Shown in pieces: positions 1-50,532 of a stretch of 64,000 nt of DNA. Every line of letters begins with the position of its first letter. Positions within the stretch are counted from its first letter, which is position 1. The stretch is from contig CM041465.1 in NCBI GenBank assembly GCA_023213395.1, forward strand, positions 71,679,741 through 71,743,740, given 5' to 3'. The notes under the pieces are model-generated. The model did not search any database. It was not told the origin of the DNA and saw nothing but the letters and a program-made list of their open reading frames with translations. The translations under genes and the position numbers were made by a program. The stretch comes from Cycas panzhihuaensis (lineage: Eukaryota; Plantae; Cycadophyta).

Positions 1-1464
1 AACCAAAAGCTAATGGGGTCTATGGATTATGACATTAGAAAATAGGGCCTAATGTTATGTGCTAAATGGTTTATCTGAGCCACATGAGGGGGAGGGGTGC
101 ATAAAAATTTCATTGAAAAAATAATCACTCCTTTGCAACTCCTTTAAAGATGAAAGGGTTCTATTTAATTCCCCATATTGAGATGTTTTCTCTGGTGGTT
201 GTTAAAGTCAAAGTCATGCATCTTCAAGTGCATCTAATCTACCCAAAGTTTGTAAGAAGTTCCTTAAATGGAAAGGAAATAATCCATGGAAGAGTTTTTA
301 GTTGGTGATTATTGCATTTGAAGGTTTATAATTATACTAAAAGATGATAAATGCCTAGGCTAGATCCCTTATTTCAAATCCAAGCAATTGGCCAAAAGAA
401 GCCTCTGCACAATGGGGCAATTCTTTGACCTAATCAAGGGTTGGTGGAGGGCCAAGTTTAAGCTCAAACAAGCCTTTGAATTTAAAAACTCTAAGCAACT
501 TTATTCTTGGGGGAATATGGAACTTCTTTATAGTGAACTAAATCCCCAAACTGATAATGAACCCATATTCTAAATGGTGGAAATTTTGAGCTTGGTAGTC
601 AACCAAAGTCTTTGGAAAGTTCCTTATATTCCATATGTATAAGCTACTGATACTCCCTATGAAGTTGGAAGGGGGGATTAACAAAAGTTGGAACACTAAA
701 GCCTATGGTAGGGTTTAGTCACAAAAAGTGGAGAGCTTTTAGAAAGTGTCACTAAATCCCAAAAATGCATGATATGCTTGATCGCTCCTATAAAATGGTC
801 TTTATATCAAGGTTAGATTAGTGAAACTTGGAAATCTTGATAGGACTTGTCCAATTTGTGATTGGCCCAAATAAATTATATACAAGATTTGGTCATTTCC
901 TTTAATTAAGAGCACTTGGGCTTGGGTTGAAATGTTCTCCAAGTTAATTCATTATGCACCATTAGGATGTAATATAGTGTTGTTAGGAGATAAAGAAGCC
1001 CTTTCTCAATCCTTCTTACCAACTTAGGACATTCTCAAGCTAGAGACCCTTTCTGCCATATGGAAGCACAAAAATGTAGTGATTTTCTCTAGCAATACTT
1101 GGTTGTTTTATTAACATTATGTAATCTATGGATCTGGATACCTATACCTTGCATATTAGTGTATAGGGAAATAAGGTGTAAGTTGAGATATCTCATCTCC
1201 TACAGTCGATAGACCATCATGGGCTCAATCCCTTCCACTATGAGTAGGCCACAACTTATGGAGAACAATGCAGTGTATAAGATTCAAAATAGGGCACGTG
1301 GTAAACGTTGCTACAAAAGCAAGAATTAGAGGGCTAAATGGCAATATCCTCAATCAATGAAACTCATGCAAAAGGATGGCCTAAGAACCATAAACAAGGC
1401 CATCAAGCTAATGGGTCATGGGTGCAACAAAGCAATGTGGACTCAAATCCTTCGAAGAGATGGG
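1..1464 (+). mobile_element. Degenerate L1-type LINE ORF2 C-terminal remnant, probably continuing at ~9536-9850 (3' end, A-rich tail) after element A
   Basis: Start reads (with frameshifts) PKANG..MLCAKWF, resembling the PK.xGGLG...AL.AKW motif after LINE RT. TCPIC at ~845 resembles the zf-RVT region. Many stops. Confidence 0.5.
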
Positions 1465-2997
1465 CGTGAAAAAAAGATATCCAAGAACAAAATAATAAAT
1501 AAAGTTTATTAGGTAGAATTAGTCTACCTTATGATATTTTCATTAATTCTCAATACATGATACAAAGTATGGTATAAATATAAACATAAGTGTTGAACAA
1601 GTTATTGCCCATTGGATGAATAACTACATTAACATTTATCATATAACCATTAAGGACTTTGGTAACTCTCAAGGATACATGGTACATATTGAGTAATTGC
1701 TCAATGATTCACCTAAGCATTAGGATTCTCAACATTAAGTTATGACCTAAATTAACATTAATTTTAATGATCTCCTTAATGTTTAGTTTATTAGTTTTCA
1801 TGCTAATACCATCTCTCAAAATTTCAAATTTAACTTGTATTAGTGATTACTAAAGATACATGTCAATTGTTCCTTGATAGGCTTGCAAATTAGTTCAATC
1901 TCCCCGCTTTGTATATGCTCTATGATAAATTTATAATGCACCTTAATGTGTTTGGTGTAAGCATGAAATATTGAATTCTTGGCTAATTTCAATGTACTCT
2001 AATTGTCATAGTACAATTTTATAAAATATTCTTGATAAAGATCTAATTCACCAAGAATCTGTGTTAACCATATGCCTTTACATGCCACTTCAACTACAAC
2101 TTTGTGTTTGGCTTTAGTTAAAGAAAGGGCAACATTAGGGTGCATCTTACTACTCCAAGTTACAAAAGTTGATACAACATTAAAATAATACCTAGAAGTA
2201 GACTTTTTATTATTACTGCACTAAGCCCAATATGAATTAGAAAACCCCTCTAATATAAACATGTTGTAGGTGAAATCGAGCTAATACTTTAAAGTTCCCT
2301 ACAAATATCTCAAAATCATTTTTATAGCTTTCTAATTGGCTTTGCTTTGATTCTGCCATAAACCTAGATATCATCCCTACTACATAAGTAATATTAGGTC
2401 TGATTGTAGTCAAATAGATGAGACTACTAATTGGTTGCTTATACAAAGTGTCATCTATTTACTTTTCTTCATTTTGAGTGTAACTTTATCCTTGTTTCCA
2501 TTAGGATTAGTGTAAACATATAATCCTCCATTATAATTTTTTTTCAAAATTTTACATGTATACTTAACCTATGAAATGAATATTCTACTAGGTCTTTTCC
2601 AAACTTCTATTCCAAAGAAGTAATAGAGTAGTCCAAAATATGTCACTTAAAATTATTCTCTAGGTCTTTTACCATCGAGGTATCATTGCTAGTTATAATT
2701 TAACTCAGTAGCATATAGGATCATTAATGTTACAAATCTTTAATCATGACCTTTTAAACATATTTTTCTAAAAATAATCACCAATTTTAGGATATCAAGC
2801 TTTAGGAGATTAAGTCATATAAAACCTTTTTTTATGCAACATGCAAGATGTTCTTATTCTTCTATATATATTTAAACAATTTCTCCATATTGATCTTTTT
2901 TGTTAAATATCTATTAAGAAAGACACTCTTTACATTAAACTATGTAGCTGCCATTTAATTTATGTAATTAATACAAGTATGATCCTAATGCTCATCA

Positions 2998-5584
<2,587 letters not shown>

Positions 5585-22175: not shown

Positions 22176-24749
22176 TGACCCTCTATCAATTGATCGATCA
22201 AGATTATATAGAAAATTTGAGATTTTAATTATTAAACATTAAATAAATCAATGGAAAAATAACACGAATAATGGGTTTTTACAAATCCGCAAGGGTAACT
22301 GAGCTTCAAAGGATAAGATCTTGCAAACGGGCTAACAAAATCTCGATCTGTCTTCGCCACTACCAAGAGAACTCAATGAGGATCGAAACAAATAGTCATA
22401 TGCTAGGGTTTTGATCGTCTAACAGAGAGCAAGAGTTAGTTGAAGTCAAGGTCACCTTATTAAACCTGAAACTGAAAGTAAAATCCAATGAAATTAATAA
22501 AAAAATCCTTGAGTTCTAATTAAAGCTCCTCCAAATCATTATCAGCATGTACACAATAAAAAAAGCTGTAAAAATTTATGAGTTAATGGTTCAAACAAAT
22601 CACACGGGCCGTGTATGTACACACACAAGTCGCATAAATGTAGAGCATATAAAAATCAAGTTACAAACTATAAATGAAGTAATGTTGATAAAAAATATTT
22701 CGACTAAGAGATATGCAAGCCAACGATGTAGACAGTCACTAAGCCAACTACGTAGGAGCATGAAGCCCTGCAGACATGGAGAGCACACAGAGAGGACGAA
22801 TGATGGCAGCGAAGTATATACTCAATGATGTACTACACCTAATAATCAAACACACACACGCGCACACACACACATACACATATATGCAAGAGGGCATTCA
22901 ATGCATGCAATGAGCTCCAAGGCAAGATGACAACTCGCATAAGCTCTAAACTATGTTATTTCATTTGGTTTCGTGGATTGAATTAATCAAATATACTCAA
23001 TAAACCTGCAATAAAGGTAAGTATAAATCAAAGGTATATTAACATGCTAATCCTTGTAGATAAACGAGGCTCTAATACCAGTTGATGGAGTGAGGGCAGA
23101 GCAGAATAGGAAGCTATAATGCCATTGCAAAATAATAACAAAACATTAACAAAAATTCCATATAATGTTGGCAGTGTTAAGAAACACCTTTGGGACATGA
23201 GGCCTATTTAAGTAGTCAAGGCATTGGGGTTGCCCAATGTTTAACGATGTTTGGTGTTAAAAAAACACCATTAAAATATTAGGTGAGTGGGTCGACTAGG
23301 GTGGTTAGAGTCGGCTCCACACCACCCAATGCAGACACACTTTTTAGATTTCTAATAAATGAACATTATCCAACAATGTTCTCCTACACTCTCTCACTTA
23401 TGATCTATAAATAAGTGGTTGAGGTAGTGTACTGAATATTGAGTGAAGATGAAGTCTATTATGATATTATTGTTGTGGAGTCATTGTGATGTAATCACTT
23501 TCATTATGAGTTAATACTATCATACTATGTTCATGATATTTGCTCTATTGTTCTTGAATATTAAATGATCTCTTTGAATATTTCAACATGGTATCAAAGC
23601 AGGTTGCTTACCTAGCATAATGATTTGTAGGTTCACTATGTTTTAATGTAGGAGGAGGTGGCTCTGTAGAGCCTATTACCAGATTGTGGTTCTGCTTGAA
23701 GAGGGTGAAATCCCAAGGGCATCAATATTTCAAAGTGTACCAAGCATTTATGCAAGACAAAATTATTGCAGATAATATTGTTCCTTTATTGTGTTATGTG
23801 AAGATAGATATGGGCCAAGGTGTATCTTGTGATGAAATTAGTTGATATAAATTTATGAAATTGGTGATGAGATGAAATTATTTTTATGAATCTGAATTGT
23901 TGGTTGAAATATTGACTCTGTACCTACAATAGTTTTGGTTTGTGTTGGAAATCGTTGAGAATTAGGCTGGTGAATTTAGAGTTAGTTCCCAAAGTTTATG
24001 CAAATTGTTTCTCTGGAAAATCCTGCCATAGCTGCTGCATAATTTTACCTATCATAAAGGAATGAATTATGTTTATATGGCTCTACGACAAAAAGATAAT
24101 CAGTCATCATAAATTATAGCACATAAGAAATGATATTGCTTGCCAAGTTGCATGGAATACAGAGTCATTTGTTCAGCTGTGAGAAGCCATGCGTAAGATA
24201 AGGAAGATTTGTCTATAGCCGAAGCTCACCACAGAATAGAAATCTCTATGTAGATATATAAACAATTGTGCATGAAGAGACAATCCAGTCCATAGATGCC
24301 CAAAACTGCCATGGAGTCTGTCCGCCTCTTGCATTAAGTGATATTGAGTGAAGCTTGTTACTATGAAGCATGGTTGGCACTATGGGAAGAGTACCCTGCA
24401 AAACCCTAAATGCAATATAGATTTCTATTGATTCTTGCCACGTATTCTCTGTGTTGGGTTGCATTGGATTCGTTCCTTATGATCGCGTATTTTGGTGTAA
24501 TTTTGACTGATTTTTGCTTGTTATTTTGGTGGTTTGTTGGACTGGATTTCGTGGTTTGGCCTAAAGGGCATCATCTGAAGCTCCAACAAGCCCTAATGGA
24601 AGGCCCCCGTGTAGGTATTGAATTGCATAGGACCATGCTTCTTTAATCACAAGCTTGTGGTGTCTGAGGAGCCTAGGAGTAGTGGTGGATTTGGCCATGA
24701 GGAGCGCTTCGATTGCCCTCAGTAGCATGACTTACATCTTTCTCTAGTA

Positions 24750-25320
24750 GACAGAGGAACTTGAGTAGGAGTCCTCACTGAAGTTTGAGCAAGAGCTGGA
24801 GTAGAAGCCCTCATCACAGTTTGAGAAAAAGCAAGACCCTGAGTAGAAGGTTTTCAAAAGGCCTAAGCCCTATCATAGAGAAAGGATCATTGCCACCCCT
24901 AAATCAGAGTCAAAGTGCAGCAAGAAGTCCTAGTCCAAAGAGCTCACCCAAACGTGTTAGGAGGGGTCATGGTTTCAGTCAATGCTGTTCTTATGCCTGT
25001 TGCTATCATACCCCTTCCCTAGAGTGTTCTCCCTCTAGATCTCATTGTTTTAGTGAAAGAAGCATTTTAGAAAGGGACTGTGATAGATATATAAGATAAA
25101 GGAGTTATCCTAATCACTCTTCACCAAGATGTTATAGTAACTCACAAAGAGGCAGGACTCCTCCAAGGTACAAGAGAAGCCAGAGTTGCAGCTTAAGTTA
25201 CAACCCAATTGCCTATTGCAATCGTAGGAGGAATCACATTGTAAGTTTTTAGAGCGATGCTCTAAGTAGATCTAGAAGCCCTAGTAGGAGCTTGCAGAGG
25301 AATTTGAGCACCTGCCACAT
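24750..25320 (+). pseudogene. Captured fragment of an SR-rich cyclophilin (CYP63/CYP95-like RS domain) inside element C; may extend upstream to ~24570
   Basis: RSPSPKSSPKRVRRGHGFSQCCSYACCYHTPSLECSP...DRY...RGRTPPRYKRS matches my recollection of the plant CYP95/63 motif [30 protein letters not shown]...RGRTPPRY. Arg>Cys/His/stop changes are typical of CpG decay. Confidence 0.8.
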
Positions 25321-40592: not shown

Positions 40593-43565
40593 GTCTTTAG
40601 ATTTTATGTGCTTGTGAACTAATCTACCTAAGATGTTGCTAATCTAGAATTCTAAGTTTTAAGAATCTATAAAAAAGTTCTTAGTTACTATTCTGCCTAT
40701 TAGCACATGCCCACAAGTGGCAAACCAGGGATCTTATATACTTGTACATGAGCTCAAGGTTCTATATATCTCAATACACGTGGTGCAATGAATGTCTAAG
40801 AACTCCCTGATTTGTTTTTCCACCTGCGCCAAACTTATGTCTAGCAACAGATCTAGCGGTAAAAACTTAACTAACTAAGGTACTCACCCTCTTCGGGTCT
40901 AGCCTGGTCTCCAAACTTTAATAGAAATATTCCCACCTCAGCTTGCCACCTATTACACCTTATAGCCAATGGTTTTCTCAACAAAGTAGAGTATACCAAT
41001 GGCGTGTACGGGATGGTAACTTCAGGGTCCTAACCGTTTCCCTTGCAAGATTGGTATAAAGAGGTTAATTTGGGAGTTATCTTTTTAATATGATAATATT
41101 GATTTTATGAAGTGAGTTATTATAAGTAAAGTTTTTTTTTTAACAAAATAACTAAAATATGAAATGGAAATAAAAGAAATTAATGAAGAAGGAAGGATTT
41201 AGAGTGCTCTTGAGTGAGCTTGCACAAGAGAGATCCACTTCAATCTTTCAAGAGTGACACCTATAAAAGACCAACGCCATGCACTTTGTTAACCAGAAAA
41301 AATAGAATAAAACAGCTGACAAAAGGTTAACAATAGCTTAAAGCAGCAAAAGAACTTTTGAAAAACTAAATTTAGCCTTTAAAGAGTGAAAAAAAAGTGT
41401 GAAGATGCTCAAACACCAAGCTCTACTTTGGTAGCTTATAACTTTAGCAAAACAACTTCAAATGTAGCTCAATCTGATTCCAAATTGTAGCCCTCTGAAT
41501 TCTCTTTCCAACAGTTCAAACAGTTAAAAAATCGAACACTTGGTTGCAAAGTTATGGCCAAAATAGTGGAGGTACCTTGTTATGAGAAAAAACTTAAGAG
41601 GGACGAGCTTAAGCCCCTTTAGAAATTAGCCCCTAGTTGCCTGCAGACTACATAAAACCACTTGTTGATGCAGCTAGGGGGTTTGTGGACTAGAAATCTT
41701 ATAAAAAACAATCTAAACTTTTTCATTATGCAAAAATAATTCAAAATGGCATAAAGTCTTTTGAAGTTTGCCCTATTAAGTGAAGGCCATGGTCATATGA
41801 GTGTTCAAATGACTAAATCAAAGGGGCTAGCCACTAGATTTCAGTGAAAAACGAAATGTAACTTGATTTAAATCACTAAAGTTCAAATCTTATTGAAAGA
41901 ATATAAAAAATTTTGAGAAAATATAAGTCGTGGAGGTCTCGCGACCTGCGTACGACTTTAGACAGCCTGCGTAAAGGAACGAAGGCCTGGAACACAGCGT
42001 AAACCCAATATTACAATATGAAATCACCAAAGGGGGGACAAAGAGCCCAAAGGAAGCTAATAGATGGTGGTTTTTCAGAAAAAGAGCTTTGGACGAATAT
42101 AAACGAGTTACGGAGAGCAAGGGGCCTGTGTGAGCTAGACAAGCTAGAAACGAGCTTTGGACTGCATAAAACTCATTTGAATAGACTCCAACAGGCTAAG
42201 AATGAGTCTAGATAACCACCAGAGAGAGATATTGTTCCAACAGGCGTATACGTCTCAATCTATGGTTGAAATGGCTTGGAAACAAACCTTTTTCACGGTT
42301 ATTTACTCAAAAACGAAACCCTGACCACATATGGTTATAAACAAATTGAGTATCAGTTGTATAGGGTTGATATATGTTGAAAATGGTCTGCATTTCATGT
42401 TAATATTGTAGTATGCACTAACAACTACAAGCAAAATAAAGAAATGAGTCGAAACATGGTGTCATTATGAGGGAATGGGTCTCCGTTTTCTAATATTTTC
42501 TAAAAAATCTTCAAGTCAAACCACAAACTAGCTCTGAAAGCATGCTAAAAACCTCCAAGATCTAGAAATCATGTGCTACTGATCAAATATCAAACTATAT
42601 TATCAAAATAATGCAATACACAAGCAAAATAAGAGCATAACAACGATAGATCAAAGTGTACGGGTGAATTGGTCACCATGTGAGGCTCAATTTGGGTAGA
42701 GCTTCCACATATAATTCAAAATCATATACGAAAGAATGATGCAGGGCTTAATTTATAAGCAACCTGTCAATATTTTCAATAATACAATTGGCCGACTAAG
42801 CGGCACATGCGGCATACCCGACCTGATTATCAAACATAATTAATTTAACAATGTGGATTGCCTTAGGGTACAAAATACATATGATGTATATAAAATTAAT
42901 ATATATTACAAAGAAATAAGGGTGATATTACAAAGTTTTAACAATCATTTTTTGACATTATTTTTTAGAAAGTGATTTTTTAATTTAATTCAATTGGAAT
43001 AAAATTTGGATTTTGCATATTTGAATTAAAGATAAAGCAGATTGAATTATTTTTGTAAGGTCATTTTTAGAATCAATTAGTTTGAAATGTAATTTGAAGT
43101 CTGCTAGCCCCGTAGCGGTTGTTAGAAGTATTAATGTCACTTTTATGTTATTATTAAGTTATTATTTAAGTCACATGTATAATTTCTGATTTAAGTGATT
43201 CTAAAGTTAAATGTTTAGAGTTTTATTAAATTATTATGTGGAAGGTCGTTGAAATGCGCAACCGCCCATTTCAACGAACCTTTCTTGGTATTAATACTTC
43301 TCCTAGATTCAAAGAGATGGTTCCAAGAATCTAGGAGGCTATCCAAAAGCCGGTTTCAAGGCTGGTTTTGTCTTTCATAGGTAGTTTTAATTATGGTTTA
43401 TGCATAGCTTTTCTTCTTAATAAAATTCTAGATTTAAGAGGTGGTTTTTCTTTCCCAGAAGGGGTTTTCCACCTATCAACCCTATGTACATGTGCAATGT
43501 CTCTTTCTCTTGTATCTTTTCTATTCCTGTGATGTTATGACTTTGTACATGTGCCTATTCTATCA

Positions 43566-44215
43566 TGGTATCAGAGCCATAAGAACAAAAATGCCCAAAA
43601 CATTCCATGTAGCAGCTAGTGTTCCAAAGAATGATAGCCAACTGATGAGAAGGCTGTTTAGAATTGCATGAATTAAAAGGATTCCCCCATAGAGAGCTAT
43701 GACCACATACTTGGAAGCCTCGTATCCACCGCCATTAATGCCCCCTGTAATGAGTAGAATAATTACTTGAAGCAATTGCGCGAGAGAAAAGTCCACACTT
43801 GTGGTGATTGCCCACTAGCCAACTATGTTAAACCAACCTGTTATCCACGCAGCGAACGGTCCCCATTCTTTACCAGAAAGTTTGGCACTCCAATAGTAGA
43901 GACCTCCGGAAGTCGAATAGGAACAACAAATTTCAGCCATGGAGAGACCAACAAACAAAGTGAAGAAACCAACAATCATCCATCTGTATACCATGGTGAC
44001 TGGACCTTTCGTATATCGGTCAGAACAGACATTATAGAAAATGAGAAGGCAAAGTTTTCCAGTACCGAAAGATCACGCTTAAGCTCTTGTTTGTAGCCGA
44101 GCTCATGTAGACGATTGTGTCCAAAGTCTGCCGGGATCCGATTGCCAGAAGATTTATTCCGTATGTTGATGCCATCCTTCTCTAAGCTGTTAGGAGAATC
44201 GACTTGCCAACCCAT
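43566..44215 (-). pseudogene. BAT1: Processed 5' part of a BAT1/GABA-permease-type (APC superfamily) amino-acid transporter mRNA
   Basis: RLHELGYKQELKRDLSVLENFAFSFSIMSVLT, then a short deletion with frameshift, then GPVTMVYRW..VGLSMAEICCSYSTSGGLYYWSAKL..WITGWFNIVG*WAITTSVDFSLAQLLQVIILL..GGILLIHAILNSL..WNVLGIFVLMALIP. Collinear with Arabidopsis BAT1 as I recall it, with no introns. Confidence 0.93.
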
Positions 44216-45752
44216 GAAAGAGAGAGCATGAAACGCAGAGAATCATTTCTTCCCGCTCAACAACAGTTGCTTGGATTACCAGTCTTGCTAATCGCAAGAA
44301 TTGGAATCAAGATGTGGATTCTCCTCGTCTTTTCGGGAGGAAATCAACAGATGAGTTGTTTCCTTTGACATTTACGCTCAATGCCAACCCCCAACAAACC
44401 AAAAACCCAACAACAGAAACTTCCGAAATAGCGGAGATAATCGCTCTGCCGCCATTGCTGTAACGCTCTAGACCTTCGACGTCGTCGCGTGGAGAGAAGG
44501 GCGAAAATGAGGTAGGGTTTCAAGGTATTAACCCCCGGACCTCAATCTTTTTCAATTCTAGTTTTCTTTAATGAATCGAAACCTGTCGTCGGGTTCGCAT
44601 TCCAAACGATTTTATGAATTGAAACCTTCCATCAGGTCTATTCAATTCTAGTTTTCTATTAGTTACATTTCAAAAATTCTAGTTTTCATTGGTAGAGGCT
44701 TTAATAGAAATATATATATTTCCACTTTCTTTAATATTGCAAATAAGTTTGATAATTTAATAAGTATAATTTCATTGGTTTCAAGTTGGATTTTATATGT
44801 TTCTTCCAGTTTATAATGCACATACACACAAGTAGATATTTCTAATGGTCTGTTATAGGTTTAGCATGAGAAATTTGAGGAGTTTGCTACAAATTTGATG
44901 CTTAATTTATGAGTTTGATTAGTCACACTTCTATTAGTTACTTTCAACATTTCTTTCCATTATATCTATTGCTTATATAAGGTGCCCATTTTGACCTCAT
45001 ATCATTCTCCATAAACTTTAGCATATCATATACATTATTTCTCAAGATTGCTCTAGTGTAACCATTAATTTGCTTAACTTTTTGAGATTCTTTTGCTTAT
45101 ATTTTGATACTATTTCAATTATCATCTACTCTATAATGGTGTTATGTGGATTACATTTGTAGTTTTGTCAAAAATTCTCTATATCTAGTATAAATACTAC
45201 TAAAATTTTCATAAGTCTAACAATTTTAACTGGGAAAATTTCATGTGTTACATAAATATGTTTTATGTCTTATAGCTTTTAGTGAATGCTATTCTCACAT
45301 CTTTTACAAGATTTCTTCAAGGTACCACAAGCATGCTACAAATTTCATCATGTGGTTGGTAAACATTATTGAGGTACATTTAATTATCATTTTAAAGACA
45401 TTAAAATAAATAAATACTCAGGTTTTTTTTTTTTTTTAGAATTACTATATTCTCAGCCTTATTTGCTAATCAACAATAGTAAAATATAGGAATTTGAACA
45501 CTTATTTTTAAGGGGAACTATTTATTTTTTAATTAAGGAGGATAATTTCTTTAAGAGGGACTATTTTTCTAAGAGGAATTATTTATTTAGCAACATGTGA
45601 CTTTTAATTAAGGAAAAACCCAGTAATACATGCTACAATGCTTTCTTTTTCATTCTTTAATCATGCATGTTAAAATGTTAATTTGATGATTAGTAATCTT
45701 ACTAAGTGATTATTTTTCACCTACCATTAAATCCTTCAATTTTCAATCAAAC

Positions 45753-48700
45753 TTGATAATTTCCAATATGACGTTAATTCCAAGGACAACCACCTGCGTT
45801 CTAATTTCAGTGTTAATTGGCTCAAACTATGCTGACTGGAGGAATTACATATTCCATCAGCTTAAACAGCAAAAGAGATGGAGATATGTGACAGGTGAAT
45901 TTAAAAAACCAAAAGATGAAACTACAAAGAGTTATATAGTATATCTAATGAACTCAGATTCAACCTTAAGCACCATATTAAGCCCACTCTTACTAGAAAT
46001 CAGTCGACAATTTTCTGAAACAGACAACCTAGCCACTGTCTGGACAACTCTGCAAGAAAAATATGATAAGGTTGATACAAATCAACTGGTTGTCTTAGAA
46101 CAACAACTGTATGACCTTACTTATGATGATTTTACCAATGTTGAGGATTTTTTATATAAAATTCAATTAATTAATAAAGACCTAGGTAACTGTATTAAAT
46201 CCAAAATCAAATAAGGTGATATTGAAAAAATAATCACGCATGCTAAAGACGACGATACATTCGTCCGTCTTGCAATAAACAAATTGCCAAAATATTTTAA
46301 TTTTTTCAAAGCTGCCAGACAACAAGCTGGCAATCCTCCGATCACATTCAATCAGTTAACAAACTAACTAGTTAAACATCAAACAATGTTGATTTAAACA
46401 GGCATATTAAAAGATCCTTCCCAGGCATTATTTTCCAAAACTAAGCCACAAAATAAAAACAAACAACAGAACAATTCTAATCCAAAATTTTAGAAACCTC
46501 ATAAAGGTTCTCAATTTAATTCTCAAAATAATACTAAATATTCTGGTCCATCTAAATATCTGAATACTCCTAATCAGTCATTTCTTAATCGGAACAATGT
46601 AAATCCTTCTCAGAACACTAGTTGTGCCTATTGTCATAAAAGATGTCACACTATTGATGTCTGTAGAAGTTGAATAGCTTCGGAAGCATGGAAAGCTTCC
46701 AAGGGATTGCAAAATCGACCTCAATTCCGGCGTCAAAACTGACAAACTTTTAATCGTTATCTAACAGGAACAACTTCTGTATTTGTTGTCCCAACTAATC
46801 AACCACCACAATGGATCCTTGACTCTGGTGCATCCCATCACATGACTGGACACCAGAAAAATTTATCCACTTATCAATCTAAAACTAACTATTTAAAAGA
46901 GATTTCTTTTGGAAGTGGAACTCAACTTAAAATAAAAGGATAAGGTGATGTAACCTTAAAAGACGGTTCGATAACAGACGTCTTCTACATACCAGGTTTG
47001 TTACCAAACCTACTTTCTGTTTATCAAATCTTGTAGAAAGACCTTGTAGTCGAATTTTATAAACATAAATTTATCATTAAAGAGCCATTAAACAAATTTA
47101 AATGTATTGTCTCAGGATATGTTGATCATAACACAGGTCTCTATAGTTTAACAAGTCTACAAAATAACAAAACAAACCCCTTCAATGCCTTTATCGCCAA
47201 CCGACTCAAGAAGCATGCACGATTTGGCCATACAAGTTATGGAAAACTTCAATATCTAAAAAAGCATGAAATGGTATATAGTCTTCCACCCTTAAACACT
47301 GTTTATGGTGTTTGCATGTTCTGACAAATGCAAGTTAAATGATGGACCCATTCCCATATAAAACACAATTCAGAGCGACTGTTCCACTTGAACTTGTTCA
47401 CTCTGACATATGTGGACCTTTTCATATAACATCATACTCTGGCTTTCGTTATTTTGTTATATTTATTGATGATTATTCAAGAAAATGCTGGATTTACATG
47501 TTCAAAACACGTAGTCAAGTATTTGACATTTTCGTTGAATTCAAAACACTTGTTGAAAACTAATCAAACTAAAAAATCAAAATTTTTAGATATGATAATG
47601 CCAAGGAATACTTAAGTGGCAAATTCACTTCTTTCTGTGAAAAATAGGAAATTCAATTCCAGCATTCTGTTGCATATACTCCTCAACAAAACAGTGTTGC
47701 TGAACGCAAGAACCGTACTCTTCTTGAGATGACCCATTGCATGTTACATGCCACGAATCTTGACCTAAAGTTGTGGGCATAAGCAATTAACTACTCCAAT
47801 TATCTTCTAAATCGTTTACCTAGCAAATGTTTACAAAACGTCACTCCAAAACAAAAATGGTCTGGAAGAAAATCTTTAGTCAATCATTTATGAATCTTTG
47901 GAAGTATTGCGTGGGGACACATTCTTAAAGAAAAACGCAAGAAACTAAATCCTAAGAGTAAAAAATACATCTTCGTTGGATACAACGAAGAAAGTAAAGC
48001 TTATAGACTCTTTGATCCAGTGACGTATCAAATTTCAATTTTGCGTGACGTAATATTTGATGAAGAATGATCTTCTTCAACATCTACTTATGTAGAACTT
48101 CCAGTTGAAAATTTGTTAACCAACATATATTTGGTTGACCCCTCTGACAAACAAGCTGATCCAGAAATTATAGAATCTTTATCTACTCAAGTCCAGAATT
48201 GGACTCTATCCGAATCTACTGAAATAGATTCTTCCTCTCAAGCAAATTCTACAAATCAACCTGTAACTTCATAAACAATTACTAACAATCAACCTGTTTG
48301 GGCAAAGAAAACACTTGTTGACGTTGGATCCAATATTGGTAATCGTTCAGATACCAGACAAACTCGTGCCCAAAAATTACATGCTAACTTTGCCTTAATA
48401 GCCAAAATAATGGATAATAATAATCCCAAAACTTTTAAACAAACTAGCAATAATCTTGTATGGAAGGAAGCTATGCAAATTGAATTCGATGCTTTAATCA
48501 AGAATTCAACTTGGGATCTCGTACCACTACCACCTAGAAAAAATGTAGTCGACTGTAAATGAGTTTATAGAACAAAATACAACTCAGCATGTGTAGTTGA
48601 AAAATATAAAGCTCGCCTAGTTGCAAAAGGATTTTCTCAAATTAATAGCATTGACTACAATGAAACCTTTACCTCTATTACAAAGATAAATATAATTAAA

Positions 48701-49710
48701 ATAGTTATTGCTCTAGCAACCAAGTTTGGTTGGGAAATCCATTAAATAGATATAAAGAACGCATTTCTGAATGGTGATCTCAAAGAAGAGATCTACATGT
48801 CCCAACCACCTGGCTTTATTGATAATCCTAATTTAGTTTGTAAATTAAAGAAATCTATTTATGGATTAAAATAAAATTCATCGAAACTGGTATCTAAAGT
48901 TAATGATTATTTAATTCAAATTGAATACACTAGATGTATTAGTGATCCAAATCTATATTTCAAATATGAAAACGAAAATATTACTATTTTAATCTTGTAT
49001 GTTGATGATATCATAATTACTGAATCATCAACTAATAACATTCATCATTTAAAATCTACTTTAATGAATAAATTCGAAATGACTGATTTTTGTATCCTAC
49101 ATTATTTTCTTAGATTACAAATCTATCAATATGATTCAAGAATCACAATATCATAACTTAAATATATTTTAGACTTAATTCAACGGTTTAACATAGAAAA
49201 TACTAAATTGCCTAATCCGATTCTGATCGGAGTTAAATTATCTACTGATTGTTCTTTACCTTTATGTGACCTTACATTATATAGACAACTAATTGGTAGT
49301 CTTATTTATTTAACTCATACACATTCTGATATTTTCTATGTTGTCGCTTTATATTCACGTTATATGCAACAGCCACATGAATCTCATTGGAAAGCTGTTA
49401 AACGTATATTATGATATCTTAAGTATACTGTTTTTTATGGTCTAACTTATAATTTTTATAGTAAACCTCTAACTTTAACTGGATATACTGATTCAGATTG
49501 GGCAGGTGATATAAATGATCGAAAATCTATATCAGGTTATGTATTTTTTATAAATTCCTCACCTATTCTTTGATGCAGTAAAAAAATCTGACTAAACTTT
49601 ATCAACGGAACCGAATATCGACAAGACTTGTTGTTTCAAAAAGCACTTTGGATCAAATTTCTACTAAATGAAATTGGTCTGTCTCTAAACTCTTCCATTG
49701 AACTCTTCCA
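45753..49710 (+). pseudogene. Decayed gag-pol of J with RNase H truncated at the 3' end
   Basis: Knuckle CAYCHKRCHTIDVC ~46623, protease WILDSGASHHMTG ~46812, integrase LELVHSDICGP..FIDDYSRKCW, RT LYVDDII ~48995, RNase H start GYTDSDWAGD ~49480. Many stops. Confidence 0.92.
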
Positions 49711-50532
49711 TTAAAGATAAAAGAAGTCTCCATCAAAGGGGGATCAACGTGATGAAATCTTTCTTTTCCTATAGCATAAAAGTTAATATTAAAGGGGGAT
49801 GTTAAAAGTACTAATGCCACTTTTATGTTATTCTTAAGATATTATTTAAGTCACATGTATAATTTCTTATTTAAGTGATTCTAAAGTTAAATTTTTAGAG
49901 TTTTATTAAATTATTATGTAGAAGGTCATTGAAATGCGTAACTTCCCATTTCAACGAACCTTTCTTGGTATTAATACTTCTCCTAGATTCAAGGAGATGG
50001 TTTCGGAAATCTAGGAGGTTGTCCAGAAGCCGGTTTCAAGGCTGGTTTTATCTTTCATAGGTAGTTTTAATTATGGTTTATGTATAACTTTTCTTCTTAA
50101 TAAAATTCTAGATTTAGGAGGTGGTTTTTCTTCCAGGAAGGGTTTTCCACTGTCAACCCCGTATTACATGTCTGATGTCTCTTTCTCTTGTATCTTTTAT
50201 GTTCCTGTGATGTTATGACTTTGTACATGTGTCTATTTTATCAGCGGTTAAGCCCCCTGGTTCTGTGTAGTATCAATGTGACCTGTCTCTAGTCTTCTAA
50301 AGGGGCTTATCTCCTAACGTCACATGTTTGTTCTTCAAAAGAAAGTGTTTACACGTTTTCTTTCATATCTTTGCATCTAGGTATCTGTTTTCCAAACCAT
50401 CTGAGACGTTGGAACCGTATTTCAAAGACAATCATTTTGGCACATGATTTGAAAGTATTTGTTGATGATTCTAGTTTAAAATCGATACAGGAATCTTGAG
50501 TAATGTATTTGTAATCAACTCAATCTCACATC

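What the first reader, a model, noticed from the sequence alone, without database searches (positions are those of the whole stretch)
43560..44215. Host mRNA captured exactly at the PBS: BAT1 codons mimic the tRNA-iMet 3' end
Seen: J's 5' LTR ends ...TATCA at 43565 and is followed by TGGTATCAGAGCCATAAGAAC. Read on the minus strand this is GTT CTT ATG GCT CTG ATA CCA (V-L-M-A-L-I-P), in frame with the permease copy. Known: plant tRNA-iMet ends UGGCUCUGAUACCA-3', and BAT1 orthologues read VLMxLIP at this position. So the 14-nt PBS and the host coding sequence coincide, with no element sequence between them. Inference: either plus-strand strong-stop DNA ending in the PBS annealed to a co-packaged BAT1 mRNA instead of minus-strand DNA, or a cleaved BAT1 mRNA replaced the tRNA primer and, lacking the m1A58 stop, was copied through. 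Both models predict the three observed traits: antisense orientation, junction at the PBS, and only the mRNA portion 5' of the mimic captured. This would be a sequence-directed capture route distinct from ordinary sense-strand template switching; I do not know of a prior description.
Basis: partly seen in the sequence, partly recalled or inferred. Interest (0 to 1): 0.92.

Follow-up and report, generated by a model that had tools for sequence, protein, structure and literature searches.

The report
Backwards host mRNA captured at retrotransposon primer site
A plant Copia retrotransposon carries a spliced, backwards copy of the front part of a host amino-acid transporter (BAT1) mRNA, and the copy starts exactly inside the element's tRNA primer site because that mRNA happens to contain a 13-base look-alike of the tRNA's end, which suggests the element's own replication DNA once primed on the host mRNA by mistake.

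Summary
Element J (43120-50243) is a complete Ty1/copia element with a 5-bp TSD (GCGGT), LTRs about 91% alike, a tRNA-iMet PBS, a PPT, and gag, integrase and RT. Straight after the LTR, the PBS (43566-43577) runs without a gap into an antisense, intronless, decayed copy of BAT1. It covers codons 1 to about 221 (44215 to 43566) and at least 300 nt of 5'UTR.

- **Parent carries the mimic.** An RNA contig of a close relative is colinear with the cargo down to 43567 and then continues as BAT1 codons. The parent therefore reads ATGGCTCTGATACC|T: 13 nt of the tRNA-iMet 3' end, and 11 nt shared with the PBS.
- **Parent has introns.** About 70 exon-limited plant ORFs place conserved introns at two sites that the cargo crosses unbroken.
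- **No LINE signature.** There is no poly(A) or LINE-type TSD, and it is the 3' part of the mRNA that is missing.

Relatives without the insert exist: PBS, 24 nt, then 45380 onward. The whole insert is therefore 43578-45379, and the origin of its last 0.8 kb is unassigned.

Best reading (about 0.6): plus-strand strong-stop DNA annealed to the mimic and copied the mRNA. This is inferred, not shown.

The parts
43115..43119 (+). 5' target-site duplication GCGGT
   Evidence: Same 5 bases at 50244-50248
43120..43565 (+). 5' LTR of Copia element J (TG...CA)
   Evidence: 91% identical to 49800-50243
43566..43577 (+). 12-nt PBS TGGTATCAGAGC, complementary to the tRNA-iMet 3' end. Bases 43567-43577 (11 nt) are shared with antisense BAT1 and hold the crossover.
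   Evidence: PBS identity per PMC3852365. Relatives of the family diverge after 43577.
43566..44215 (-). Antisense, intronless, decayed BAT1 coding fragment (codons 1 to about 221)
   Evidence: blastx 76-80% to plant BAT1; Pfam AA_permease; 95% identical to parental RNA contig X10 rec 13
43815..43817 (-). In-frame stop TAG at the codon that is CAG (Q138) in the parent; also the site of a conserved intron that is absent here
   Evidence: other runs read G at 43817; exon starts cluster at residue 138
43593..43595 (-). Codon G212, site of a second conserved BAT1 intron, absent here; the mimic lies 4 codons downstream in the next exon
   Evidence: Exon-limited ORFs end at 212/213; DNA contigs of relatives break at 43594 and 43600
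44007..44008 (-). Site of a 28-nt deletion relative to the parental mRNA (causes the frameshift)
   Evidence: X10 contig has 26+1+1 extra letters here; the X1 captured-type contig lacks them too
44216..44521 (-). BAT1 5'UTR homology. GC-rich, mRNA-like composition continues to about 44609.
   Evidence: X10 rec 14, X1 rec 7 and 8, X4 rec 29; GC falls from 42-47% to 24-30% near 44600
44522..45379 (.). Rest of the insert, origin unassigned. Mostly AT-rich and non-coding, low copy, with short repeats spaced 90 nt apart at 44551-44690.
   Evidence: No ORF, Pfam or Rfam signal; no match elsewhere in the window; depth similar to the cargo; repeats
45380..45752 (+). Native leader of the family. Insert-free relatives join PBS + 24 nt directly to 45380.
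   Evidence: Joint 43577->45380 in X2 and X4 with the same 24 letters between; depth rises to 500-4000
45753..49700 (+). Degenerate gag-integrase-RT of a Ty1/copia element
   Evidence: Retrotran_gag_2, rve and RVT_2 hits; broken ORFs
49791..49799 (+). Polypurine tract AAAGGGGGA
49800..50243 (+). 3' LTR
50244..50248 (+). 3' target-site duplication GCGGT

Best explanation
During one replication cycle of an ancestor of J, the plus-strand strong-stop DNA made a wrong transfer. This DNA is the LTR plus a 12-nt copy of the tRNA-iMet primer end, ...TGGTATCAGAGC-3'. Normally it moves to the PBS complement on the minus-strand DNA. Here its 3' end annealed instead to a co-packaged, spliced BAT1 mRNA, which carries GCUCUGAUACC (11 perfect pairs, including the 3' terminus) at codons 218-221. 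Reverse transcriptase then extended it along the mRNA towards the mRNA's 5' end. That produced an antisense, intronless copy of the 5'UTR and codons 1-221 directly abutting the PBS. Synthesis then returned to the element's minus-strand DNA 24 nt downstream of the PBS, possibly via another template that supplied 44522/44610-45379, and those 24 nt were lost. The chimeric element stayed transposable and spread modestly. This copy later inserted with its own TSD and decayed. Shown: the anatomy, the 11-nt overlap, the parental mimic, the spliced origin, the insert-free relatives, and multiple cargo copies in related genomes. Inferred: every enzymatic step.
For: The three-way junction shows the overlap. 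J reads ...TATCA|TGGTATCAGAGC|CATAAGAAC, the insert-free relative reads ...TATCA|TGGTATCAGAGC|TATTCTACA, and the parent in antisense reads ...CAGCA|GGTATCAGAGC|CATAAGAAC. An 11-nt overlap at a random junction has probability about 2e-7. Only about 0.7 sites per 45-Mb transcriptome would share 13 nt with the tRNA end. Other plants' BAT1 mRNAs match only 9 of 14 scattered positions here, so the mimic is specific to this lineage's parent. The orientation fits: the element's plus strand is the complement of the mRNA, running from the mimic towards the mRNA 5' end, which is what extension of a PBS-ended plus-strand DNA on mRNA gives. Only the part 5' of the mimic is present, although the parental RNA contig runs 1070 nt further. 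The cargo crosses two conserved intron sites. Insert-free relatives occur in two organisms. Intronless cargo contigs occur in DNA runs of relatives: rec 4 and rec 16 span 43713-43866 with 2 differences, and 10-16 distinct contigs cover 43648. So the chimera amplified after capture. Unchecked notes of this scan report the same architecture with other host genes in this genome.
Against: No step of the mechanism is observed directly. The parental sequence at the mimic rests on one RNA contig of a coded relative (X10, 'RNA?' by guess), and I saw only its alignment limits and 30 loose letters, so a mismatch inside 43567-43579 cannot be excluded. The parental locus of this genome itself was not available. 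The far end of the cargo is not resolved. BAT1 homology is documented to 44521 (to about 44609 by X1 and by composition), a minor X10 contig continues 311 nt upstream with unlike sequence, and 0.77-0.86 kb of the insert has no assigned source. So 'copied to the mRNA 5' end' is not shown. No contig bridging the LTR-PBS-BAT1 junction in another genome was among the pieces listed. That the strong-stop DNA ends after 12 nt is recalled knowledge, not tested here.
Confidence: 0.6

Rival explanations
1. A cleaved BAT1 mRNA fragment ending ...GAUACC-3' replaced tRNA-iMet as the minus-strand primer. Plus-strand synthesis then copied this unmodified primer all the way to its 5' end.
For: It gives the same product: antisense orientation, junction in the PBS, only the 5' part of the mRNA present, and the T at 43566 templated by the element. 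The mimic matches the tRNA end over 13 nt.
Against: It needs a precise cleavage after CC with a 3'-OH, and priming from an 11-bp duplex without the tRNA's other contacts. That is an extra rare event compared with simple annealing of strong-stop DNA. Nothing in the sequence calls for it.
Confidence: 0.1
2. The insertion happened at the DNA level. A break just 3' of the PBS in an integrated or extrachromosomal J copy was repaired by microhomology-primed copying (SDSA or filler DNA) from a BAT1 cDNA or an existing processed BAT1 retrocopy plus its flank. The chimera transposed later.
For: The insert replaces 24 nt, as filler repair does. The unassigned 0.8 kb could be the genomic flank of a retrocopy donor. 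Capture of reverse-transcribed spliced mRNA at breaks is documented in other systems (PMC4516963, listed; title and abstract only).
Against: It needs a break exactly at the PBS and an intronless, 3'-truncated or suitably oriented donor, which are two extra coincidences. It does not predict antisense orientation or that the overlap be the functional PBS. Scan notes report repeated PBS-adjacent antisense cargos with different genes in this genome (unchecked), which would be hard to get from random breaks.
Confidence: 0.15
3. The junction overlap is a coincidence of an ordinary, non-directed capture (read-through, minus-strand template switching, or LINE-mediated retrocopy insertion into the element).
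For: LTR elements do carry host fragments picked up by template switching (PMC13317346, PMC5131818).
Against: Minus-strand switching and read-through give sense-oriented or unspliced cargo, whereas this cargo is antisense and spliced. LINE retrocopies keep the 3' end, a poly(A) tail and a TSD, whereas here the 3' part is missing and there is no A/T run at either cargo end. An 11-nt overlap by chance has probability about 2e-7.
Confidence: 0.05

Closest known systems
Host gene-fragment capture by LTR retrotransposons through RT template switching (maize Bs1; 'LTR-mediated retroposition', Tan et al. 2016, PMC5131818; reviewed in PMC13317346)
   Same: Intronless host mRNA sequence sits inside a complete LTR element with its own TSD, and there is short sequence identity at the switch point.
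   Different: Those models switch templates during minus-strand synthesis and give cargo in the element's own orientation at arbitrary internal sites. Here the cargo is antisense, abuts the PBS, and the overlap is the PBS itself. Neither paper mentions PBS, strong-stop DNA or the cargo's orientation relative to the element.
Second (plus-strand) strong-stop DNA transfer of retroviruses and LTR retrotransposons
   Same: It uses the same reagent: LTR DNA ending in a copy of the tRNA primer's 3' end, which looks for its complement (general scheme in PMC13191261).
   Different: The normal acceptor is the PBS complement on minus-strand DNA. Here the acceptor would be a cellular mRNA with a chance look-alike, and the extension is RNA-templated.
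Ty1-mediated retrosequences and chimeric Ty1-cDNA in yeast; retroviral oncogene transduction (recalled from memory, not checked here)
   Same: Cellular mRNA is reverse-transcribed inside the particle and joined to element sequences at microhomologies.
   Different: As far as I recall, these are sense-oriented and not anchored at the PBS.
Plant BAT1 / GABA permease (AA_permease family), the parental gene
   Same: 76-81% amino-acid identity to BAT1 over residues 1-221; Pfam AA_permease hit.
   Different: A truncated, antisense, frameshifted pseudo-fragment, not a gene.

Membership tests
Ty1/copia LTR retrotransposon | Paired LTRs with TG...CA ends and a 5-bp TSD | tested here: met
   LTRs 43120-43565 and 49800-50243, 91% alike; TSD GCGGT
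Ty1/copia LTR retrotransposon | PBS complementary to tRNA-iMet directly after the 5' LTR; PPT before the 3' LTR | tested here: met
   TGGTATCAGAGC at 43566; AAAGGGGGA at 49791; motif per PMC3852365
Ty1/copia LTR retrotransposon | gag, then integrase, then RT (Copia domain order) | tested here: met
   Retrotran_gag_2 at 45753, rve at 47339, RVT_2 at 48995; all ORFs are broken
BAT1-type amino-acid permease gene | Sequence homology to BAT1 / AA_permease | tested here: met
BAT1-type amino-acid permease gene | Complete open reading frame (about 520 aa) | tested here: not met
   Ends at codon ~221; stop at 43815-43817; 28-nt deletion at ~44007
Processed (mRNA-derived) copy | Introns of the parent are absent | tested here: met
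   Continuous over conserved intron sites at residues 137/138 and 212/213; colinear with an RNA contig. The parental locus of this genome itself was not seen.
LINE-mediated processed pseudogene | 3' end of the mRNA with poly(A), and a flanking TSD | tested here: not met
   The 3' 1 kb or more of the mRNA is missing; no A/T run at the cargo ends; 24 nt replaced, none duplicated
Template-switch gene capture by LTR elements (minus-strand type) | Cargo in the same orientation as the element | tested here: not met
   The cargo is on the minus strand and the element on the plus strand
Proposed plus-strand strong-stop mis-transfer onto mRNA | Junction lies within the PBS, and the parental mRNA carries the PBS complement at that codon | tested here: met
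   11-nt overlap at 43567-43577; parent reads ATGGCTCTGATACC|T. One RNA contig of a relative.
Proposed plus-strand strong-stop mis-transfer onto mRNA | Only mRNA sequence 5' of the mimic is present, in antisense | tested here: met
Proposed plus-strand strong-stop mis-transfer onto mRNA | Cargo runs to the 5' end of the mRNA | tested here: inconclusive
   Homology reaches 44521-44609; the TSS is unknown; X10 rec 14 continues 311 nt with unlike sequence
Proposed plus-strand strong-stop mis-transfer onto mRNA | Strong-stop DNA ends with the 12-nt tRNA copy, and RT can extend it on RNA | not testable with these tools
   Biochemical. The 12-nt stop at modified position 64 is recalled, not verified.

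The most novel reading that the evidence does not exclude
Plant Copia elements have a recurrent, sequence-directed route of gene capture. Plus-strand strong-stop DNA mis-anneals to cellular mRNAs that by chance mimic the 3' end of tRNA-iMet and copies them backwards. This creates a cargo slot between the PBS and gag that always holds antisense 5' parts of spliced host mRNAs. Such elements would transcribe antisense host RNA from the LTR promoter and could feed silencing of the parent genes.
Probability: 0.4. Interest if true: 0.85.

Novelty: new variant of a known kind. Interest (0 to 1): 0.72.

Why it matters
Gene capture by LTR retrotransposons is usually attributed to unspecified 'aberrant template switching'. 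Here the junction is a legible fossil of one specific step. It names the donor strand (plus-strand strong-stop DNA), the acceptor (a spliced mRNA) and the guiding sequence (an 11-13-nt look-alike of the primer tRNA's end). It also explains orientation, position and extent in one stroke. If general, the route predicts from sequence alone which host mRNAs are at risk of capture: about ten per transcriptome at 11 nt. It would explain why cargos in this genome sit antisense next to the PBS, and it offers a natural source of LTR-driven antisense transcripts against host genes. It can be tested with standard retrotransposition assays.

Tried and rejected
Intron positions were inferred instead from exon-limited ORFs.
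- **The search for homologous proteins with the 77-aa ORF** found nothing closer than 83%, so the source species' own BAT1 was not identified.
- **The metagenome scan** returned only intronless plant transcripts (L001-L003) and microbial homologues, with no plant genomic BAT1 locus. L002 and L003 showed only 9 of 14 scattered matches at the site.
- **No second J copy in the window** and no internal match for 44522-45379. That stretch has no ORF, Pfam or Rfam signal. The 24 nt of the insert-free form are not in the window. The window holds no tRNA gene.
- **The other Copia PBS sites** (18526+, 23069-, 23589+, 33000-, 38441-) show no obvious antisense cargo by ORF inspection. This was a shallow check.
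- **Literature searches** found no description of capture at the PBS, or of antisense capture by strong-stop DNA. The held library lacks many older subscription papers, so this is not proof of novelty.
- **Rejected routes:** LINE-mediated retrocopy (wrong end of the mRNA, no poly(A) or TSD); read-through transduction (the cargo is spliced and antisense); minus-strand template switching (it gives sense cargo).
- **5'UTR intron retention at 44521 or at the 105-nt skip (44310-44414):** no GT..AG fits within the allowed shifts.
Full report
**1. The observation**

The sequence is as described. The 5' LTR of element J ends ...CTATCA at 43565 and is followed by TGGTATCAGAGCCATAAGAAC. On the minus strand this is V L M A L I P, in frame with ORF 43563-43796.

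J is a genuine, complete Ty1/copia element:
- The LTRs at 43120-43565 and 49800-50243 are 91% identical and have TG...CA ends.
- A 5-bp target-site duplication, GCGGT, lies at 43115-43119 and 50244-50248.
- A polypurine tract lies at 49791-49799.
- Pfam finds Retrotran_gag_2, rve and RVT_2 in Copia order, all in broken frames.

TGGTATCAGAGC is the standard plant Copia PBS, complementary to tRNA-Met (PMC3852365). In the window it occurs 6 times at up to 1 mismatch, against 0.26 expected.

**2. The cargo**

The minus strand from 44215 to 43566 encodes the N-terminal ~221 residues of a BAT1-type amino-acid permease:
- The middle piece hits Pfam AA_permease.
- The 77-aa ORF is 81% identical to residues 145-221 of a 530-aa plant BAT1, P0001.
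- blastx against 120 plant BAT1 proteins gives 76-80% over residues 75-221 and about 79% over residues 24-66.

The fragment is a pseudo-sequence. It has one in-frame stop at 43815-43817, where relatives read CAG. It also has a 28-nt deletion at about 44007 relative to the parental mRNA. Upstream of the ATG, at least 300 nt of 5'UTR are present. Nothing 3' of codon 221 is present.

**3. The parent carries the mimic**

No run holds the stretch fully. I laid four runs on 43400-45800.

Run X10 is RNA. It has 50 M letters, the gene contig has depth 50, and LTR depth is only about 30, against about 100,000 in the whole-genome runs. It has a 1767-nt contig colinear with 43567-44235 (33 differences, 28 gap letters). 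The contig continues 1070 nt beyond the junction. The 30 letters before 43567, read on the sense strand after the window's own letters, give ATGGCTCTGATACC|TGCTGTTGCTCCTAAGAGAGCTAGC. This translates to M A L I P A V A P K R A S L, which matches the BAT1 consensus M-I-L-I/V-P-x-V-A-T-E-R-A-S.

The parental mRNA of a close relative therefore shares 13 contiguous nt (TGGCTCTGATACC) with the tRNA-iMet 3' end. It departs from the element only at the base that corresponds to 43566.

BAT1 mRNAs of other plants (L002, L003) match only 9 of 14 scattered positions here. Chance expectation for a 13-mer is about 0.7 sites in a 45-Mb transcriptome. For an 11-nt overlap at a given junction it is about 2e-7.

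Caveat: I saw the contig only through its alignment limits and loose-end letters, so a mismatch inside 43567-43579 is not excluded.

**4. The parent has introns that the cargo lacks**

About 70 short ORFs called on genomic contigs of many plants are homologous to BAT1 only between residues 138 and 212/213. There are 44 starts at residue 138 and 46 ends at 212/213. After W-N-x-x-G they run into unrelated sequence, and before W-A-V-T-T-S they show unrelated sequence ending in Q (the CAG acceptor). mRNA-derived fragments, by contrast, continue V-F-V-L-M-I.

This places conserved introns at window positions of about 43815-43817 and 43593-43595. In the laid DNA runs, contigs break at 43594 (X1) and 43600 (X4, 64 unlike letters). 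One X1 loose end reads ...GGCCAG|GTCCGTCAAA on the sense strand, which is an exon end plus a GT donor.

The cargo is continuous across both sites and colinear with the RNA contig. The mimic lies four codons into the next exon. The cargo therefore derives from spliced mRNA.

**5. Relatives without the insert, and the true size of the insert**

In the whole-genome runs of two organisms (X2, X4), a contig joins 43577 to 45380 with the same 24 letters between. Other family members also diverge right after 43577. Three things follow:
- The family's PBS is 12 nt.
- The insert is 43578-45379 (1802 bp) and replaced 24 nt of leader.
- The 13th and 14th tRNA-matching bases of J come from BAT1.

The three-way comparison places the crossover inside the 11 nt GGTATCAGAGC (43567-43577).

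The insert has two parts. The first is GC-rich (42-47%) and mRNA-like. It is documented as BAT1 to 44521 and probably extends to about 44609 (X1 rec 8 and composition). The second is an AT-rich (24-30%) stretch reaching 45379. It has no ORF, Pfam, Rfam or in-window match, and its copy number is as low as the cargo's. Its origin is open. It could be a second template, a subfamily-specific leader, or a longer BAT1 transcript.

**6. After the capture**

DNA runs of relatives hold intronless cargo contigs. Rec 4 (X1) and rec 16 (X2) cover 43713-43866 with 2 differences, spanning the 137/138 intron site. X1 also holds a contig with the same 28-nt deletion, beside a parent-type contig that keeps those letters.

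Ten to sixteen distinct contigs cover 43648. Summed depth over the cargo is roughly 1-4% of that over the native leader. Several internally deleted variants appear as joints.

So the chimera transposed after the capture and is a small subfamily. LTR divergence (9%) and cargo-parent divergence (5%) suggest that the capture and this insertion are of similar age, a few million years at usual plant rates (inference).

**7. Mechanism**

The element's plus strand after the PBS is the complement of the mRNA, read from the mimic towards the mRNA's 5' end. That is the product expected if a DNA ending in the PBS sequence primed reverse transcription on the mRNA. The natural DNA of that kind is plus-strand strong-stop DNA (general scheme: PMC13191261).

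With a 12-nt tRNA copy, its 3' end ...GGTATCAGAGC-3' pairs perfectly over 11 nt with the parental GCUCUGAUACC, and its extension gives exactly the observed ...GAGC|CATAAGAAC. The 12-nt stop is what I recall for plant and fungal initiator tRNA, which carries a 2'-O-ribosyl phosphate at position 64.

Return to the minus-strand DNA 24 nt past the PBS is plausible, because the internal PBS can still pair with its normal partner and hold the strands together (inference).

A DNA-level repair of a break at the PBS, using a BAT1 cDNA or retrocopy, remains possible. It would give a natural source for the unassigned 0.8 kb, but it needs more coincidences and does not predict the orientation. LINE-mediated insertion, read-through and minus-strand switching are excluded by the anatomy.

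**8. Comparison with what is known**

Capture of host fragments by LTR elements and microsimilarity at switch points are known (PMC5131818, PMC13317346). Neither source mentions the PBS, strong-stop DNA or the cargo's orientation relative to the element. My other searches found no description of this route. The library is incomplete for older retrovirus and Ty1 work.

I class this as a new variant of a known kind: template-switch gene capture, but on the plus strand, guided by a tRNA-end look-alike.

**9. Earlier notes of this scan**

These are unchecked by me and are not independent evidence. The same architecture is reported elsewhere in this genome:
- An antisense, spliced FY fragment of about 0.95 kb abutting a Copia PBS with 8 shared bases (s1-817219, followed up by another agent).
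- An enolase case (s1-829088).
- Four 'recurrent architecture' notes.

In this window, the other five Copia PBS sites show no obvious cargo. Element C's RS-domain ORF is sense-oriented and about 1 kb from its PBS.

**10. Verdict**

The mechanism is well supported by anatomy but not demonstrated. Interest 0.72.

Noticed in passing
window 43594 (read laying X1 record 3): A 177-nt contig of a relative places intron-like letters plus the end of the upstream exon (...GGCCAG|GTCCGTCAAA on the sense strand) directly beside 43594-43742. That order does not fit a simple gene or the cargo. It may be a rearranged copy, a duplication or an assembly chimera.
   Followed up: no
window 43640-43720: In whole-genome run X2 the PBS-proximal ~100 nt of the cargo has much higher summed depth (265-576) than the rest of the cargo (26-119). 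This suggests a more abundant derivative subfamily that keeps only the start of the cargo.
   Followed up: no
window 43831-44435: Relatives hold internally deleted or rearranged cargo variants. The joints are 43831->44082, 43979->44172 and 44212->44435, some with 28-39 other letters between.
   Followed up: no
window 44310-44414: 105 nt of the captured 5'UTR are absent from a minor RNA contig of a relative (X10 rec 14). The ends do not fit GT..AG in any allowed shift, so this is an indel rather than an intron. The main X10 transcript diverges from the window about 20 nt upstream of the ATG.
   Followed up: partly
window 44551-44690: A short motif (TTCAATTCTAGTTTTCT) occurs three times, at spacings of 90 and 31 nt, at the boundary between the GC-rich 5'UTR-like part and the AT-rich unassigned part of the insert.
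   Followed up: no
window 45423-45440: A run of 17 T on the + strand (A on the minus strand) lies in the native leader, just after the insert's distal junction. It is shared with insert-free relatives, so it is not a cargo poly(A) tail.
   Followed up: partly
window 18526, 23069, 23589, 33000, 38441: Five more tRNA-iMet-type PBS sites (exact or 1 mismatch) mark other Copia elements on both strands. No obvious antisense host cargo follows them by ORF inspection.
   Followed up: partly
window 24785-25099 (+): An arginine/serine-rich 104-aa ORF lies inside the element whose PBS-like site is at 23589 (+). It is in sense orientation and about 1.2 kb from the PBS. It matches another first-reader note (SR-cyclophilin fragment) and has a different architecture from J.
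   Followed up: no
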